Assembly (NCBI GenBank): GCA_963924565.1
Contig: OZ004614.1
Coordinates: forward strand, 23,126,001-23,190,000
Length of the DNA stretch: 64,000 bases
Direction of reading: 5' to 3'
Source of the DNA: Ascidiella aspersa
Lineage: Eukaryota
Part shown: piece after piece, positions 170 to 9,700 of the stretch
Layout of the letters: each line of letters begins with the position of its first letter
Numbering within the stretch: position 1 is the stretch's first letter
Translations under genes and position numbers: made by a program
Notes under the pieces: generated by a model
The model's database searches: none
Seen by the model: the letters and a program-made list of their open reading frames with translations, nothing else
What the model was told of the DNA's origin: nothing

Positions 170-526
170 ATGAATTTCCAAACTTTTCGTAAAATAAAGC
201 TATCTTTTGTAACTACAGCAGAGAACTAGCAGTTCGACTTTTTAAGGCATAGTTATACAAACAAAAAACACACATAAAACAATAGATTAGATAGCACAAT
301 ATTCTGTTCCATCAAGCCTCACCAAAAGTATTTGTGCCGCAGCAAATACATAATTACTGGAATAAACCGTATTTTTGTCATGTTTTGGTTTTACATTTTG
401 TAAATATACTTTTGACACTATAGCAGAGAACTATAAGTTGGAAATTTTTTAGCGGTCACTAAATCCAACTAAAAAAACAACAAAAATATAGTACACAAAC
501 AAGAGAAACCATCAACCCTCACCAAA
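170..526. repeat. ~200-bp degenerate tandem duplication including the EGF7 exon donor
   Basis: ccatcaagcctcaccaaa (309-326) vs ccatcaaccctcaccaaa (509-526); agcagagaacta at 217 and 422. Confidence 0.7.
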
Positions 527-711
527 TGAGCAGGTAAGTCCGTTCCAGCCCAAATCGCATACGCAGAGTCCGTTTACGCACGCTCCGTGTTCTGCGCACT
601 TCGCCGGGCACTGTTTGACATCGCAAGCGTCGCCCGTCCAACCGTCTTCGCAGCGACAAGTTCCGTCTACGCACGTTCCGTGTTCCGAGTGACAGGCCGG
701 CCTACAGACCG
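523..711 (-). CDS. TENM: Teneurin exon: EGF6-EGF7 (AVCRPACHSEHGTCVDG...GWNGLTCSF)
   Basis: 189 nt, phase 1-1; acceptor cccttcccgtgctgccgcag, donor G|gtgagg; two complete 6-Cys EGF repeats. An alternative upstream acceptor exists at 762/765. Confidence 0.92.
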
Positions 712-3700
712 CTGCGGCAGCACGGGAAGGGTGGTTGAGATTGGTGGAGCCCAACTTAAGGTCTACTTGGCGGTGTTTGTTTTTATGTTTTTTTTTTGTA
801 TTTTTAGGTATTTTTTGGTAATTTTTTTGGTATTTTTGGTATTATTTTGGTGTTTTTTGGCGTTTTTTTTTTGGTATATTTTTGGTAATTTTGTTGGTAA
901 TGATTTGGTATTTTTTGGTAATGTATTTGTGTATTTTTATGGCAGGATTGTCAATGTTTTGCGAAATAGTTTGTAGCAATATTGTTACATTTTTGTGGTT
1001 TATCCGAGGTAGCATTATGGTGAATTACAGTGTTGGTGGTTGTTAAATGGTGCATGGTGGCAATTTTTAGTGTTTTTTGTGGTTTGTGTCGTGGTGTGGG
1101 AAGTTTTAGGAGACGAGAGTTTGTATAATTGTCGGAGTATTAGGATTGTGTTTTTTTGGTATTTTGTGGTTTATTTAGTAGGTTATTTATGTATTTGTAA
1201 ATTTTATAATTCAGGTTTTACGGTTGTTTTAAAGTTGTGATCGGTAGTATAAATTGACAAAAGGGGTGGGCAAATTTGATGTTCCAATGCACAAACCATG
1301 CACGATTAATGGCGATTATTTCGATTTTGAAAACATTTACAATATCATCGCATATCAAACAGTCGGTTTTTGAGTTCGTTTGGCGTATTTTTTATGTCGT
1401 CGTGCAAATGAATAATGACCGTGTTGTACAAAATGGTTCGGGATTACGATTTTTCGGTGGTGGTTTTGTTAGGATGGCACGGCAAGCAAAATTAGGAAGA
1501 GAGAGGATGGGAAAGGAAGAAGGAAAAAACAAAAAAGAGAGAAAAATAAAAAAAGGTTAATACTACGTCAAAACCAAGGCAAATAAATATGCAAAAACAC
1601 TAGTTGTTTTCTATTAAACAAACACACAACAAACGAATTTTGATTCATTCATTTCTAAATGACCTCACTCAGAGAAATGACTGTTACATGCCAAGGTCAA
1701 AATATAAAAAAAAAATATCTAAAATGTTGCTATGTAAAAAGTTAGGTATTTTCGCTTTTAAATGGGCTGTAAAACATATATTAAGTTTTTTTTAATAGAA
1801 AACCTATAATATAAAACAAATCCAATTGCTTAAAATTAAAAAAAACATTAACAACTTATCATCAAAATCATGCACAAAAAACAAACAAAAACACAAAAAA
1901 CATTCAAACGACATTTGTCGCAAATTAAACAAAACGCATGACGCGTATTCGTGTCAGACAACAAATACGTCAAATGGTAAGTTTTAAGGGTGACAAAAAA
2001 TCAACTAAACATGCAGTGTGTGAAAGCTACCTATGGTAACACGACTGTTTGTTTATCTTTGTACTTTTTCTATGTTTTGCCTGTGAGCAATACGTTATGC
2101 AAACACAATGTAAGTTAAGTATTACTACCACCCAAATAGCAAACGGTTATATCTACTGAGCAATCAAGGATTGTGTGAAAGCGGTGATAAAACCACCAAG
2201 TTTTTAAAGTTACTAACTTGTCTAACTCTAGTTTACCTATTGCTAACAAATTACAAAACGGGAAATTGGGAAAAAATTGGAAAAGTCTATACGGTCGAGG
2301 ACTTTAATGTCATTAATTGAATTGCAGCCGGGGTCACCAATTGACACTACAAATTCATTTAAGTCCACGCGAAAGTGCACATTCAAAACAGGGGTAACTT
2401 TTTTAATAAAAATAAACAAAAAAGCAAAACAAGATGAGCATTTTCAATAAAATAATAATAATGCCATAATATTTAAAAAAAATCAGCATTCCGTTGTTTT
2501 CAAACGTTTTGGTAATACATCATGCAATCTTCAGTGTAAAAATTCAAGAAACGTTTGTGAACGTTCGTATTTTCGAAACGTTTAGTAAACAACGAAAAAT
2601 CGATTTTTTTCCAATATTAGTGCTTTATTATTTTATTACAATTACTAAGTAAACCCGTGTAGTACAAATAAAAAAACAGCTCCTCCGGTAATCATTCACC
2701 CTGACGAAGGCGACTAGCATAGGTTACCGGAACGTTGGTAAAAAATTACAATTACCAGAGGAGCTGTTTTTTAATTTGCATTACTATGCCTGGTAGCAAC
2801 AGTTTATATAAACCCGTGTATTGTGCTCAACGAGAGCACCACACTTACCGGTTCTACAGTCGCTACCGCCCCAGCCGGGGTAGCAGACGCACTTGGACGA
2901 CACTTTGTCGAAGATGCCGCGTCCACTGCAGTCAGCTGGACAGCTGGTGTCAGGTTCCTTACAGGTCACTCCGACCCAACCGCGGTCGCAGCGACACACT
3001 CCAGCAAGACACAGACCATGGCCGGAACAAGTCGGCTCCAGGCAGTCAACTGAAAAAAAAGTCAAGTCAGATTGAGCAATGTTTGTGAAAATTGCAGTTT
3101 TCTTGGGAGGTAAGATTTAGCTGTTTGCGCTAAAGAATGCAGGTAAACGTTTTTTTCTGCTCTATTACGGTGAGCTTTTCACATTAGATTTATAAATGTT
3201 TGAATCAAGAATATACAACAGTTTTCATTTGATTGTTGAAACTGATACTCTAGTAAAACCTTATTATAAACCACTTCTTCGCACAAGATTCTTTCATATA
3301 CTCCAAGAATAAGATTAAAATCATAATAAAACAAACTTTGAAATAAGATCGTATTATTACCACGATATTGTTGCCCTTTAGGCCTTAATGAGTGTTCCAA
3401 ACAAAACAAAACAAAACAAAACAAAACAACACGTCACATCACTCACTTTCTTCGCACGAAATTCCCTTGAATCCTTCCTGGCAGACGCACTCGCCGTCGG
3501 CGCCGCAGGTTCCGTGTCCGGCGCAGTCGGGCTCGATGCACTGGTCCGACTGGGTTCCACAGTCTACCCCCTTCCAGCCGGAGAAGCACACGCACTTCCC
3601 GTGCGCGTACACGCCGTTACCACGGCAGTGGATAGAACAGGAGACTGGTGAGACAAAAAAACGGTTCTGTTGTTAAATCTCTATTTAAGAGTCCTTTTTT

Positions 3701-6700
3701 TCATATTGAAAGCATAGTATTAGCGACTTTTAAATTTAATTCAATAGTGAAAGAACCACAGAAGTAGAACATTTTTGACTCCTTTTAATGGTACTTTATC
3801 TTCTTAAAGAGTACTTTTTATATTGAAGTAATTAGATGGTACTATATAGAAAACATCCTATTGAATTCTCTACAAGCTTTCGCGCAACCGTGCTTATCAG
3901 GTCAAAGTTGAAATGCTCTTTCTTTTAACGTTGACCTGATGAATTTTTTTTAGTTTTGAAAATTGTTTTCATTTCTACTTTAACCTAAAGAAGGACGGTT
4001 GTGCGAAAGCTTGTCATTTGTTATTACAAATTGCCGTTTTAAAAAACGAAAACCCTTACGTATACTGCATTTCATTCAAGAGTATTGACAAAAAAAAATA
4101 GAACAATACAAATTACCTTGCGAGCAGTCGCTGCCCTGAAACCCCGCAAAGCAGTGACATCTTCCGTCGATGCAATCTCCCTTTCCTTTGCAATTATGCG
4201 GGCACTTGGACAGTCCGCCTGCAACAAACACACAGTTATTGATGGATAGTTAAGGGTGTTATAAAAATATTTCCTTATTTTATTGATCTTGATAAGTTAT
4301 GAAACGTTTCACGAATAATATTGGTGAATACAAAAGTGTCGAATATTTTTCTATGAAAAAAATGGTGATTGGTTGAGAATCGAATACACCTGAGAGTTGT
4401 ATAGAGGCGAAATGTTGGCTAGCTCTTTGCGACTTTTGTATTTCCACGTAGTGTGACAATGCCTGGAGTCCCTATAGCTTCCTTTTTACGGAAATTTCAT
4501 GATAGGGTATAAAGATATCCGACAAATCGGATGCCGATACTAATTGGTAGTATTCGTGACCGTAACGAAGCTGACCTGAAATAGAGGGTTGGATTTCAAA
4601 GAGCTCTTCGTTGGTCCCGTCGTTAAACACGGCAAGGTGCCAAGTCCCCGGTTCCATGTACTCCATGAAACCGGTGTTGACCCTTCGCTCCTCGGAAGAG
4701 GATGAAGAGGACACGCTCCTCCTCTTGCGAGCAGAGGACTCCATCGCAAAGGTGGCAAAGGAGGTCGTCAGCGCTCTGGTGGATGGAAGGGAGTCGGCGT
4801 CGATCCTCTCGAAGAAGTTGAACTGGAAGTGAAAAGAGGAAGCGGTTATGTCTTTTGAAAACAAAAAACGACGTTTTGTTGAAAATGAATAGCAGGTAAA
4901 AAAGCTGCGGTTTTTGATATAAAGGTTAGGTTTTCCAGAGGGGGTCAAGCACAAAAAACACAATATTATTGTATGTACCGTAAGGTATTTTCGCTGACCA
5001 CGTGCTATTTTTGTGTTTTTTTGTGTTTTATTGTTCTAAAGTTGATACACTATAAATAAACTTAAATCAGCGTTGCAAAGAAACAGTTATATGAAGTACT
5101 TTGTATTCGTAAAGAACCTTGGGTGCATCAAAAATAGATACAGCCAAACATGTTGTATTGTGTTGCGAAACCATTCTACGTACAACAGCTTAACAAGTTA
5201 ATGTTAAATCTAGACCAAGTTTAGATCTTTTTTCGTTAACGCTTACTTAAATGCAACCCACCGCCGTTGATCGCAGAGTAACGGAGCTCTAAACCTAATC
5301 CCAGAAAAGACATGTAAGATTAACGGGAAATCAGTTTGTTTAGATTTTTACGGCGCGAAAATCCGTTTCAAAGGTTAACCTTTACATTTACGCATCAAGC
5401 AAAAGCGATTTCGGGGACATCAAAGTAAACTCATTTTCAGGTTCAGGTTCCAGTTCTAAATTTGCTTTTTTTACTTGATGTGCATACAAGTAATTGTTTG
5501 CCCATAACAATTTGAACAAATTCCTACCGACATTTAATTTTTATTAAGTGAATTTCTTGGGATAGAGATAATCAACGAAAAAACAGTAATAATAATAGCA
5601 AAGCCCATATAGAAGTTATGCAGCATTTTGAACGTTTCGAGTATCTCGTTTATTCATTTTCAACAATATGTTGATGTTGAAAATGAAATACGAAAAGTTG
5701 AAACATGACGCTGAAAATGAATTAAAAGATGTTATTCGAAACGTGAAAAACTATACAAACTTCTATATGAGCTTAGATGTTCTTACTACGTCTAACTAAA
5801 ACCTCCGACCAATGAGCTGCGAAGAAATAATATTTTAACAATATGCAAGCTGTCGCATTTCGGAACATCATTTTACTTTGCTGAATAGCATCGATACAGA
5901 TTCAGTTTTTTTATCGGAAAATATAGGAAAACAAAAGACAGCGTTGGAGCATTTCGTAACGCGACAAGGTTAAGCTCTAGCCGGATTACTTCAACACTTC
6001 CATCTTCGCATAAACATTGGGATTACTCTCTCGCGGAAAAAGACTGAAAAGAATGCTTTGTGGTCACGACTGATACAGTCGAGGCTGAATCGCGCCGGTT
6101 CCTGCCTAATCCCCATACTTCCCAGTTTAACGCCGAACGCTAGCAAAACCTTAATCTGAATTTTGGGGCATAATGGTTGGAGGTTGTAGTAAGACGTAAC
6201 AAGAATATCAAAGCCCATACAGAAGTAGGTGGCATTTTGAACGTTTCGAATAACTCAAAAAGTTTAAAATAAATAAAGAGTTAATCTAAATTGTTTTGGG
6301 ACAGTACCGATACCACTTAGTATCGGACGAGGTACCGATACTACAAGTTGGCGTCTGGTATCGGCCCAGATCCGATATTATCGGACATCCCTAGTCACCA
6401 CTTTCACATTTATCGAAAACGGAAACCGCAGTAAACCTGGTTTGCAAGTTTCGTAAGAACTAAAAATACCCCCCTAAAGTGAATTCCTTGATCCGACCCA
6501 GTGCTGGCTCGCATTTTTATTTCTTATCCTGGAGTCTGTATGGAAGGATTATGGCCGTCATTTGGCATCGTTTTTCTCTCTTGCTCCACTTTCTGCCGAA
6601 TTTCTCGACATAAGAATAAAATTCTCCCAAAATAGACTAAACTTGTCGTCAACTATTTGCAGAATGTTGCAAAAATCATGTGAAACAAGAGAAGTTAGAT

Positions 6701-9700
6701 GTGGATCTACTTGTTGATAATGACGTCATTTGGCATCGGATCAAACGGACGCGTTTTTCGCCAAAAATGTCGGAACTCGAAATAAAACACCAAATATCGG
6801 AATTCCCTACATAAAAAAAACATGACAAAAAGCGAAGCGTTGGTTTACATAAGAGAGAATTTTTTTAAAAAGAGATAAAAAGAGAACGAAAAAAAAAAGA
6901 GAAAGAGATAGAGGCCCAGGTGCGGTCATATTGCGGCGGTCATTTGTCCAGCGCAGAGGCCGAGGCACTTACAATGCGCCTGTGGCCTTAATCTCCTCGC
7001 GTCCCGCTTGCAAACACGGTTCGGGGATTGACGATTCGGCGAGCCGCGAAATCCGAAACGTGCCCGGATCAAAGTTTCCAAGACCAGAGGCCGGGTGGCC
7101 ACTATGCTTTCCCTATATGGACACGACATAACGGAATGGCCGATTAGTCTTTTGCGGTCAGCTTAGACAAGCACTTTCCTATTTTTTGCCTGGCCGAATA
7201 CTAATATAGCTAGAATATTTTTTGTTTTGTCCCATTTTTAGTTTGCTTTTTAAGTTTAGAATTAGCACTTTCCTAGAATGATTGTTCTGTTGTTGTTTTA
7301 GTTTTTTCGTCTTCCCAAATCCTGGAGACATTCTGATGCCTAATAAAATAACCGTCACTTTGTACGTTGTTGACCCATTTTATAGTTTTTTTCTTTTATT
7401 TAGGTTGATCAGTGTGAAATTAGCACTTTTCCTCAAAAGGATTTTTCTGTTTTCTTTTGGTCTGCCCAAATTCTTTAGAATTTACGTTTTTTTAAGTTTT
7501 ATAGAGTTGGCACCTCAGAAGGGGGAAATTAGCACGTTTTTTTAGAAGGGTTTTCTGTTGTTTTTTTCGACAGTTTGAGTCCCTTATAAATGACGACTTG
7601 TTTTTCCACCATAATTTCGAGCTAATTTAACGTTTCTTAAAGCCCTAAAACTAAAAGAAAATTCGGTAAAAACGTAAAAACAGCCGTTAAGCTGTCCTTA
7701 AGTTGTCGTTAACTTTCTAGGGACCTCGTGAAGTTTTGAGCGAACGTCCTAGGCGGGATTTGGATAGACTAAAAGGATTTACGACCTGTGAGGGCTCGCT
7801 GAAAATTTGCTATTAAAAGACAAGGCAAGGCTTAAACGTGACAGACTTCAGTGTTTTGAATTGGTGAATCATTCTTACAAATTGTCTTCCACTTAAGAAA
7901 CAATATTTTAACGCACTTGTGTTTTCGTGCTGTTTCTCGTTTTTCTAAGTTTATTCTTTGCGCAGCATTCGTTTTATTTCGGGCATCCTAAAAGCGTACA
8001 GCGTCGTATGAAAGACATATATCTGCTTCTTCCGACAAAGAAAACAAACTACATGCTAGTCTTTTCACGGTAAAAAAAAATAAAATTTGATCCTCGGTTG
8101 CACTAACTAGAGTAGAGCATTACACAAATAACGGGGGGTAATTGAGGGCAAGAAGACCGGAATTTTTTTACGACTCATTTTCCGCAGGAAAGTGGATTAA
8201 CTTCCTTGCGTGCGCCGCTTTTTAATCTGTTTGCCTTTCGAGATTACGGGTCGGGTTGCACATAAACAGGTCAAAACAAAACATCAGGAGTCGCCTTTTT
8301 TCACGAAGTCGTACTCCAACTGCGAAAGCTGCGATTTGGTTCCCGCGTTAAAATCTGCGAGGCGTTAAAATGTGCGGCGCGCCGTCTTGAAAGGTGCTAA
8401 GAACAAAAACAGGTGAAATTTCAGCAGCGCAATAGATATTGCATTCCGCTCTAAAGACGCCTTTCGTGAAATACTTGAGGAATATTTCGGGCGATATTCG
8501 ATAGCCGTAATAGGCACAACGTCATAAGATGCCCCTTGGTACGAATCGCATTTCATGCTCAAAGCGGTGGTATTCAATCTAAACTCGAGATCGAATATCA
8601 CAGGAACGACTGGCGTGCGTTTTTGCGTTATCTGATTTCGAATTACATCGTTTTGTGTTGGACGTTAAGTGCTGACGCTGCTGCGAAAAAATGCAAAAGG
8701 TGTATAGGCTTACAACGCGTTCCATTTGGCTTATTGGGTTTAATATTAGGCGAAACACGGGAAACCTGTATTACCAGAGTTATTCATGCACTCCATAGCC
8801 TACAAAACGCCATTAAACACATTTTTTTATCGAGAAAATTTCTTACTCTATTGAAACAAAAGAAACAATAGTAACAGTGTTTTTAGAATTTGCAATTCCT
8901 TGCGTTTTTAGAATTTGCAAAAATTTCCATTTTAGAGAAAAAAGTTTGGCTTGAAAATCATAAAAAAAACGAAAAAAATAAAAGCCATCGCCCAAAACAA
9001 TTAACAGACTTACTGAACAAAAAAATCTTGTTTGAAAATTTCACGAAACCTAAGCATAAAGTCAAGAAACACTTATCATTAACCGCACCGGTTCGGGTTC
9101 AATTGTGTTCTGACGTAGGCCAACAGCTGACAGGATAAAGCTGGCCAGAAAAGCCCCGGAACCCAGGGGCGCCGTTGGACCCCAAGGGGGCCACAAAGCC
9201 CCAAGACTTACCCACAACCAATACCACTGAACTTAAACGTGGTTAAAATTTATGTACGACAAGTGCAATAGCGGAATGTAAGGTTAATGTTTAAGTGGCC
9301 TGTTTTTTTTCAATGGGTTTTGTATAGGGCGAGGTAAAGGGTTTTAAACGAAGGGCTGTGTTAGCGATTGGGCGCAACGGCGTTAAGTTAATCATGGGGT
9401 GTGCGCTGGACGTTTTCAAGTGCGCTGTAGTTGGAGCGTTCAATAGTGAGGTCGGTCCTACGCTTAAACTTGGCTTCACCGTGGAACAGCGAACAATAGG
9501 ACATTATTCTTAAGTCAAAAACGCGAACAACCTGCTATTTTTTGACAGTGAAAATAATCGAGCAAATCAAAACAAGTCTTGCTTCCATTTTCTGGCTAAT
9601 GTAAGAAAAAAATAGGTTTTCACTAACAAGAAACTGCAAGCGAATGTTAAGAAACTATAGGTCAACTATGGCTAAGGTAGAACAAAGTAAAAAAAAAGAA

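What the first reader, a model, noticed from the sequence alone, without database searches (positions are those of the whole stretch)
712..767. Competing acceptors give a 0, 17 or 18 aa insert between EGF5 and EGF6 (NAGNAG plus downstream CAG)
The first AGs after the exclusion zone form a tandem AAG|TAG acceptor (exon starts 765 and 762) that has no local pyrimidine tract. Both are in frame and add (V)DLKLGSTNLNHPSRAAA. The CAG at 712 has its own CTCAAC branch-like motif and pyrimidine tract and gives the canonical EGF spacing. Inference: choice of distant versus local branch point switches linker length. Vertebrate teneurins tune adhesion with a short EGF-region insert, but that is between EGF7 and EGF8, so this would be a different site.
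Basis: partly seen in the sequence, partly recalled or inferred. Interest (0 to 1): 0.75.

Follow-up and report, generated by a model that had tools for sequence, protein, structure and literature searches.

The report
Possible variable linker in teneurin EGF stalk
A teneurin gene has two kinds of intron end before one exon, an ordinary one and an unusual far-controlled one 51-54 bases upstream, which could add 17-18 amino acids between two EGF domains, but no RNA data could confirm that either is used.

Summary
On the minus strand, exon D (EGF4-5, 3049-2849) is followed by a 2.1-kb phase-1 intron. Exon E (EGF6-7) can start at 711 (CAG), 762 (TAG) or 765 (AAG). The 51/54-nt extension is open and in frame and reads (V)DLKLGSTNLNHPSRAAA.

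Indirect evidence favours both classes of site. The AAG/TAG pair ends a 795-nt AG-free zone: 0 AG against about 23.5 expected, and the longest dinucleotide-free run in the window by far. That zone begins at a TATTAAC motif followed by an 85-nt stretch of at least 88% pyrimidine. The 54 nt have exon-like composition. CAG712 gives the family-typical EGF spacing and is more acceptor-like than any of 146 AGs in coding DNA of this gene.

Neither decisive test could be done. The one RNA run gave zero depth on all five exons, and no orthologue could be reached.

Verdict: a plausible but unproven switch in linker length through branch-point choice. Confidence is about 0.45. First readers also noted shorter AG-free zones in other genes of this genome.

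The parts
2849..3049 (-). Exon D, encoding EGF4-EGF5 (201 nt, phase 1-1). EGF5 has five cysteines. Donor GT lies at 2848-2847.
   Evidence: Pfam EGF_Teneurin 2.2e-15; EGF_TEN profile positions 94-158.
1556..1562 (-). TATTAAC branch-point-like motif (candidate branch A at 1557), directly after the last AG (1564-1563) before the AG-free zone.
   Evidence: Sequence reading. The match to a branch consensus is from my own knowledge; the branch point is not mapped.
1479..1563 (-). Very strong pyrimidine tract (the span where 50-nt windows are at least 88% C/T; core about 1555-1494), rich in CUCUCU/UCUU-type runs.
   Evidence: one of only 2 such tracts on the minus strand of the 64-kb window, and none on the plus strand.
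768..1562 (-). AG-exclusion zone: 795 nt without AG. It is A/C-rich and single copy apart from a low-complexity ACCAAAAA-type tail.
763..768 (-). Tandem AAG|TAG acceptor candidates (exon starts 765 and 762) with no local pyrimidine tract.
712..765 (-). Optional 54/51-nt segment, in frame and open, coding (V)DLKLGSTNLNHPSRAAA. GC is 0.57.
755..757 (-). Additional AAG (exon start 754, +44 nt), out of frame, leading to a stop after 17 codons.
734..739 (-). CTCAAC local branch-like motif, about 24 nt upstream of CAG712.
   Evidence: Sequence reading. The motif match is partial (yUnA with a purine after the A).
712..714 (-). CAG acceptor giving the family-typical EGF5-EGF6 spacing (exon start 711).
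523..711 (-). Exon E core, encoding EGF6-EGF7 (189 nt, phase 1-1). Donor GT lies at 522-521.
   Evidence: Pfam EGF_Teneurin 4.4e-18; EGF_TEN profile positions 156-220.

Best explanation
Exon E (EGF6-7) of this single-copy teneurin gene has two classes of 3' splice site. The first class is a tandem AAG/TAG at 768-763. It has no local pyrimidine tract, so it can only be reached from a distant branch point (TATTAAC at 1562-1556 plus a long CU-rich tract), by first-AG scanning across a 795-nt AG-free spacer. The second class is a conventional CAG at 714-712 with its own weak branch-like motif and C-rich tract. Using the distant branch point adds 17 or 18 residues, (V)DLKLGSTNLNHPSRAAA, between EGF5, which forms the covalent dimer, and EGF6. 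Using the local branch point gives the canonical tight EGF5-EGF6 junction. What is shown: the sites, the frames, the AG-free zone and its statistics, and the composition. What is inferred: that both branch points are used, that the choice is regulated, and that linker length alters stalk-to-superfold geometry.
For: The 795-nt zone has 0 AG. Fifty-five G residues are never preceded by A although A makes up 43% of the zone. Mononucleotide shuffles give a mean of 23.5 AG and a minimum of 11 in 5000. It is the longest run free of any dinucleotide in the window, 797 against 302 for the next. AG is normal upstream of the zone, 48 in about 1285 nt. The zone starts at TATTAAC and at one of only 2 long pyrimidine tracts on this strand in 64 kb. 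This matches the hallmarks of distant-branch-point exons in Gooding et al. 2006 (PMC1431707, passages), where the first AG downstream is used. The zone is not a repeat-family property. Segment 712-765 has GC 0.57, like exon starts (0.54-0.61) and unlike the last 54 nt of 4 of 4 other introns (0.30-0.37). It is open and in frame. CAG712 gives contiguous EGF_TEN profile coverage, 94-158 then 156-220. Seven of 7 solved teneurin chains align only from residue 17-21 of the extended exon. None of 146 AGs in 3077 nt of homology-supported coding DNA of this gene matches its acceptor-like context.
Against: There is no transcript evidence. The only RNA run (about 6% of it read) had zero depth on all five exons laid, so no junction was seen. 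There is no evidence on conservation. The branch points are motif matches only. A branch-to-AG distance of about 790 nt is roughly twice the 400 nt given as the upper range in PMC1431707, so it would be unprecedented. The out-of-frame AAG at 755 sits within 12 nt of the tandem pair and could compete with it. Open-and-in-frame by chance is about 0.12. The high GC of the 54 nt could simply reflect a C-rich pyrimidine tract. No insert at this position appeared in the Pfam profile or in the PDB teneurins.
Confidence: 0.45

Rival explanations
1. Only the canonical CAG712 is used, through its local branch point. The upstream AAG/TAG are never spliced to, and the AG-free zone and pyrimidine tract serve another purpose (for example a protein-binding platform) or serve a different exon such as the candidate 12-nt microexon upstream.
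For: CAG712 alone matches the family spacing and has a good local context. AAG/TAG have no local tract. A scanning distance of about 790 nt has no precedent in the passages I read. Open-and-in-frame by chance is about 0.12.
Against: This reading leaves the 795-nt AG depletion unexplained, because AGs upstream of a locally branched acceptor should be neutral. It also does not explain why the compositional boundary lies at 766 rather than 712.
Confidence: 0.25
2. The long form is constitutive in this species. The exon always starts at 765/762 via the distant branch point, and CAG712 is just an internal codon pair (GCA-G) that happens to look like an acceptor.
For: On the scanning model the first AG after a distant branch point is chosen (PMC1431707). 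The distal branch motif and tract are far stronger than the local ones. The 54 nt are compositionally exon-like.
Against: None of 146 coding AGs in this gene looks as acceptor-like as CAG712. A 22-residue gap between the last Cys of EGF5 and the first Cys of EGF6 is absent from the Pfam profile and from 7 of 7 solved teneurins.
Confidence: 0.15
3. A single distant branch point serves all the acceptors, and the choice is made at the second catalytic step. The proximal AAG/TAG/AAG are sometimes bypassed, for example when masked by a local hairpin or a bound factor, so that CAG712 is ligated instead.
For: The predicted minimum-energy fold pairs UAGACC (765-760) with GGUCUG at the start of the core exon. 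The local branch motif is only a partial consensus match.
Against: The hairpin is not better than shuffles (z -0.89; 35 of 200 shuffles fold as well). The whole spacer shows no structure (z +0.44). In the passages read, competition between AGs is described only for AGs closer than 12 nt.
Confidence: 0.1

Closest known systems
Distant-branch-point exons marked by AG-exclusion zones (Gooding et al. 2006, PMC1431707; examples named there include PTB exon 11)
   Same: An AG-free zone immediately upstream of an acceptor; a branch-like motif and a long CU-rich tract at the 5' end of the zone; normal AG density upstream of it; an expected link to alternative splicing (passages).
   Different: The zone is 795 nt long, against 'up to 400 nucleotides' in that paper's abstract. 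It is in an invertebrate teneurin. Here the proposed alternative is a second, conventional acceptor 51-54 nt downstream in the same exon, not exon skipping or mutually exclusive exons. No branch point has been mapped.
NAGNAG tandem acceptors (PMC3250501; search listing and abstract only)
   Same: AAG|TAG are 3 nt apart, and both are in frame, differing by one codon (Val).
   Different: The pair has no local pyrimidine tract, and its use is unshown. A third AG 8 nt further downstream is out of frame.
Vertebrate teneurin splice insert A (PMC11058771, PMC3278476)
   Same: A short optional peptide in a linker of the EGF stalk. [quoted passage not shown] An EGF5-EGF6 spacer could plausibly act on the same EGF6 contact.
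   Different: The position is EGF5-6, not EGF7-8. The length is 17-18 aa rather than 8-9 aa. It would arise by alternative acceptor choice. No sequence similarity was detected, since PDB alignments start only after the insert. Its existence in mRNA is unproven.
Arthropod Ten-m alternative insert in the TTR domain (PMC10240212)
   Same: An invertebrate teneurin ectodomain with a short alternatively spliced insert (9 residues; passages).
   Different: A different domain (TTR rather than the EGF stalk). That paper's passages mention no site in the EGF region.

Membership tests
Teneurin | Teneurin-type EGF array | tested here: met
   EGF_Teneurin 2.2e-15 and 4.4e-18. EGF_TEN profile positions 94-158 and 156-220 on exons D and E. 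Best PDB hits are teneurin-2 and teneurin-3.
Teneurin | Odd-cysteine EGF2 and EGF5 (covalent dimer sites) | tested here: met
   The translations show five cysteines in EGF2 (exon C) and in EGF5 (exon D). Their role as dimer sites is taken from PMC11058771.
Teneurin | Downstream TTR, FN-plug, NHL, YD and C-terminal toxin-like regions | tested here: met
   Seven of 7 downstream open frames tested match solved teneurins, with E-values from 1.6e-5 to 1.6e-24. GBD_Tenm3 matches on exon A.
Distant-branch-point (AGEZ) exon | AG-free zone of at least 100 nt ending at the acceptor, with normal AG density upstream | tested here: met
   795 nt before the AAG at 766, against 20-53 nt at four other acceptors of the gene. 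There are 48 AGs in the 1285 nt upstream of the zone.
Distant-branch-point (AGEZ) exon | Branch sequence and pyrimidine tract at the 5' end of the zone | tested here: met
   TATTAAC at 1562-1556, followed by the strongest pyrimidine tract of the region. This is motif-level evidence only.
Distant-branch-point (AGEZ) exon | Experimentally mapped distant branch, with splicing to the first AG | not testable with these tools
   The RNA run gave zero depth on the exons. No lariat data are available.
NAGNAG tandem acceptor | Two AGs 3 nt apart, both used | tested here: inconclusive
   The AAGTAG motif is present. Its use could not be observed.
Vertebrate teneurin splice insert A | Insert of 7-9 residues between EGF7 and EGF8 | tested here: not met
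   The candidate insert lies between EGF5 and EGF6 and is 17-18 residues long. It is an analogue by position in the stalk, not a member.

The most novel reading that the evidence does not exclude
A branch point about 790 nt from its acceptor, roughly twice the longest distance cited in the literature I read, is used in vivo and competes with a local branch point. Branch-site choice would then set the length of the tether (0 or 17-18 residues) between the disulfide-linked EGF5 stalk and EGF6 in an invertebrate's only teneurin. This would be a second, independently evolved way of tuning teneurin geometry through an EGF-linker insert.
Probability: 0.35. Interest if true: 0.75.

Novelty: new variant of a known kind. 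Interest (0 to 1): 0.5.

Why it matters
If the long and short junctions both exist, this locus would extend the known range of first-AG scanning from a distant branch point to about 0.8 kb. It would also be a compact natural system, with one intron and two branch points, for studying branch-site competition. For teneurin biology it would show that EGF-stalk linker length is also a tunable parameter outside vertebrates, at a different linker. That linker lies directly after the EGF5 dimerisation cysteine and before EGF6, the repeat whose docking is controlled by the vertebrate insert (PMC11058771). If only the canonical junction is used, the 795-nt AG-free zone still needs an explanation.

Tried and rejected
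RNA evidence. The look-up of sequencing runs listed three DNA-like runs and one RNA run. Read laying on 300-4900 gave zero RNA depth on all five exons. Reads lay only on two intronic repeats (2610-2917 and 3842-4149), so no junctions could be counted. Both tools are now at their caps.

Orthologues and isoforms.
- The word search with the 80-aa extended exon E and with exon D found no candidate. Only proteins of 44-140 aa and 36-115 aa respectively were visible to these searches.
- The representative search returned 3593 hits. The 150 listed are multi-EGF proteins, and blastx of 20 kb of downstream teneurin exons against them gave 0 hits. No teneurin id was obtained, and the blank says nothing about the insert.
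- The metagenome scan gave 5 loci. Two are bacterial and three are generic multi-EGF genes. None is a teneurin.
- No paralogue is available for an internal comparison. Two of 2 exon queries hit only this locus. The best EGF hit elsewhere (L002) is an EGF-plus-FN3 gene. PF25024 matches 52 EGF loci, which does not discriminate.
- I did not build or search a joined exon D+E model.

Structure. The 881-nt spacer gave z +0.44 and the local hairpin z -0.89. I rejected both as evidence.

Repeat origin of the AG-free zone. Rejected: the zone is single copy apart from five weak low-complexity matches to its tail.

Cassette exon inside 712-765. I looked for a donor site there and found only weak GT contexts (reading). 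Rejected.

Supplementary files were not consulted. Appendix figures of PMC10240212 and the supplements of PMC11058771 may list further isoforms.

Full report
WHAT IS THERE. The gene lies on the minus strand. Five consecutive exons were mapped by reading the sequence and by Pfam: A (4822-4576, GBD_Tenm3), B (4218-4116, EGF1), C (3644-3446, EGF2-3), D (3049-2849, EGF4-5) and E (711-523, EGF6-7). The four introns separating exons A-E are all phase 1. Exons D (201 nt) and E (189 nt) are symmetric. Exon D ends ...GSDCRT followed by G, with donor GT at 2848-2847. In the 2137-nt intron the last four AGs have their G at 766, 763, 755 and 712. These are AAG (exon start 765), TAG (762), AAG (754) and CAG (711).

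FRAMES. Starts 765 and 762 are in frame and open. They add VDLKLGSTNLNHPSRAAA or DLKLGSTNLNHPSRAAA in front of AVCRPAC.... The only other correction is that exon E ends at 523, with donor GT at 522-521.

GENE IDENTITY. Exons D and E hit EGF_Teneurin (2.2e-15 and 4.4e-18). They cover EGF_TEN profile positions 94-158 and 156-220, so the junction at 711 makes the profile contiguous. In the 80-aa translation of the extended exon, the seven solved teneurin chains align only from residue 17-21 onward, and nothing aligns to the insert. All seven downstream open frames tested in the next 20 kb of the contig match solved teneurins. EGF2 and EGF5 each have five cysteines; these are the repeats that form the covalent dimer according to PMC11058771 (passages). 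Two of two exon queries found only this locus in the 308-Mb genome, so the organism appears to have a single teneurin gene. This is a lower-bound search. I could not name the organism.

THE AG-FREE ZONE. An earlier first-reader note on the same window pointed to an AG-free zone, and I tested it. Between the G at 1563 and the AAG at 768-766 there are 795 nt without AG. A is 43% of the zone, and none of its 55 G residues follows an A (28 follow T, 23 follow C, 4 follow G). Five thousand mononucleotide shuffles gave a mean of 23.5 AG and never fewer than 11. Across the whole window and all 16 dinucleotides, this is the longest free run, 797 against 302 for the next. Upstream of the zone AG is ordinary, 48 in about 1285 nt.

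THE ZONE'S 5' END. The zone starts at AG|TATTAAC (1562-1556), followed by a CU-rich tract. This tract is one of only two on this strand in 64 kb, and none on the other strand, that reach 50 nt at 88% pyrimidine or more. The four other mapped acceptors have AG-free zones of 20-53 nt, and CAG712 has 41 nt. The zone is single copy apart from weak low-complexity matches to its ACCAAAAA-rich tail. It has no significant fold (z +0.44).

WHAT THE LITERATURE SAYS ABOUT SUCH ZONES. These are the hallmarks given for distant-branch-point exons in Gooding et al. 2006 (PMC1431707, passages). [quoted passage not shown] AGs closer than 12 nt compete according to the preceding base. That paper gives 100-400 nt as the known range.

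IS 712-765 EXON OR INTRON? The last 54 nt before acceptors A-D have GC 0.30-0.37 and T 0.30-0.39. The first 54 nt of exons A-E have GC 0.54-0.61. Segment 712-765 has GC 0.57 and T 0.22, so the compositional step lies at 766, not at 712 (four comparators only). A C-rich pyrimidine tract could contribute to this. An intronic 54-mer of this gene is open in a given frame 36% of the time, so first-AG-in-frame-and-open has a chance of about 0.12. That is suggestive only.

IS CAG712 A REAL ACCEPTOR? It gives the family spacing: four residues between the last Cys of EGF5 and the first Cys of EGF6, against 22 with the insert. Its -23..-4 region is 75% pyrimidine, with 41 nt AG-free upstream and a partial branch motif (CTCAAC) about 24 nt away. 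In 3077 nt of homology-supported coding DNA of this gene, none of 146 AGs is as acceptor-like (YAG, at least 75% pyrimidine, at least 41 nt AG-free). Two of 146 pass relaxed limits.

RNA. The look-up of sequencing runs listed three DNA-like runs from one study and one RNA run with the same species label. Laid on 300-4900, the RNA run (about 6% of it read) had zero depth on all five exons. Reads lay only on two high-copy intronic repeats, and no RNA joint was reported. This shows neither use nor non-use of any junction.

CONSERVATION. Not testable here. Word searches with exon E (extended) and exon D found no candidate in the visible length ranges. The representative search listed only multi-EGF proteins, with 0 teneurins among the 150 by blastx. 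The metagenome scan gave bacterial and generic EGF genes. No paralogue exists for comparison.

LITERATURE ON TENEURIN SPLICING. Vertebrate teneurins carry an 8-9-residue insert between EGF7 and EGF8 (PMC3278476, passages; PMC11058771, passages). In mouse Ten3 this insert acts as a spacer that dislodges EGF6 from a YD/ABD groove. Arthropod Ten-m has a 9-residue alternative insert in the TTR domain (PMC10240212, passages). My single search for teneurin, alternative splicing, EGF and Ten-m listed 15 of 50 papers. I read passages of three of them and saw no EGF5-6 site. That is not proof that none is in print.

READING. Three models compete.
- Canonical-only (0.25) leaves the AG-free zone unexplained.
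- Long-form-only (0.15) leaves the acceptor-like context of CAG712 and the family spacing unexplained.
- Two branch points serving two acceptor classes explains all the observations. I hold it at about 0.45.
- A variant in which one distant branch serves all acceptors and the choice falls at step 2 gets 0.10. The hairpin that might mask the proximal AGs is not significant (z -0.89).

Among the three clustered proximal AGs, TAG (start 762, 17 residues) should be favoured by its preceding base (rule quoted). The AAG at 755 would give a truncated product. The CU-rich distal tract resembles the binding sites of PTB-type repressors. That is recalled knowledge, not tested here, and it suggests regulation of the distal site.

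LIMITS. All support is indirect and comes from one genome. The branch points are motif matches. The composition test has four comparators. The organism is unknown.

Noticed in passing
window 1669-1680 (minus strand): A candidate 12-nt phase-1 microexon (TCATTTCTCTGA, adding VISL) with a long T-rich tract and AG before it and a GTGAGG donor after it, about 110 nt upstream of the distant branch-like motif. It would be a further way to vary the same EGF5-EGF6 linker. A first-reader note also covers it.
   Followed up: partly
window 2610-2917 and 3842-4149: Two intronic stretches with word depths in the thousands to tens of thousands in the DNA-like run. They are the only places where the RNA run gave reads. 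A contig joint links them on opposite strands (2810 to 3917). This looks like a high-copy, transcribed inverted repeat element.
   Followed up: no
window 6864-6920 (minus strand): The only other pyrimidine tract of at least 50 nt at 88% or more on this strand in the window. The next AG is 56 nt downstream, at 6807. It may mark another unusual acceptor or an alternative exon upstream of exon A.
   Followed up: no
window 523-4822: The four introns separating exons A-E are all phase 1, and exons D and E are 201 and 189 nt. EGF-pair exons could therefore be skipped or duplicated without breaking the frame.
   Followed up: partly
G000 whole genome: Only one locus matched the teneurin NHL exon and the C-terminal exon (2 of 2 queries). 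The C-terminal exon matches vertebrate teneurins (4e-12) better than fly Ten-m (7e-4). The animal appears to have a single teneurin gene.
   Followed up: partly
L002 (G000:C9:26451717-26454884): A separate gene with many tenascin/teneurin-type EGF exons followed by an FN3-like exon. It is the best EGF match outside the teneurin locus and is not a teneurin.
   Followed up: no
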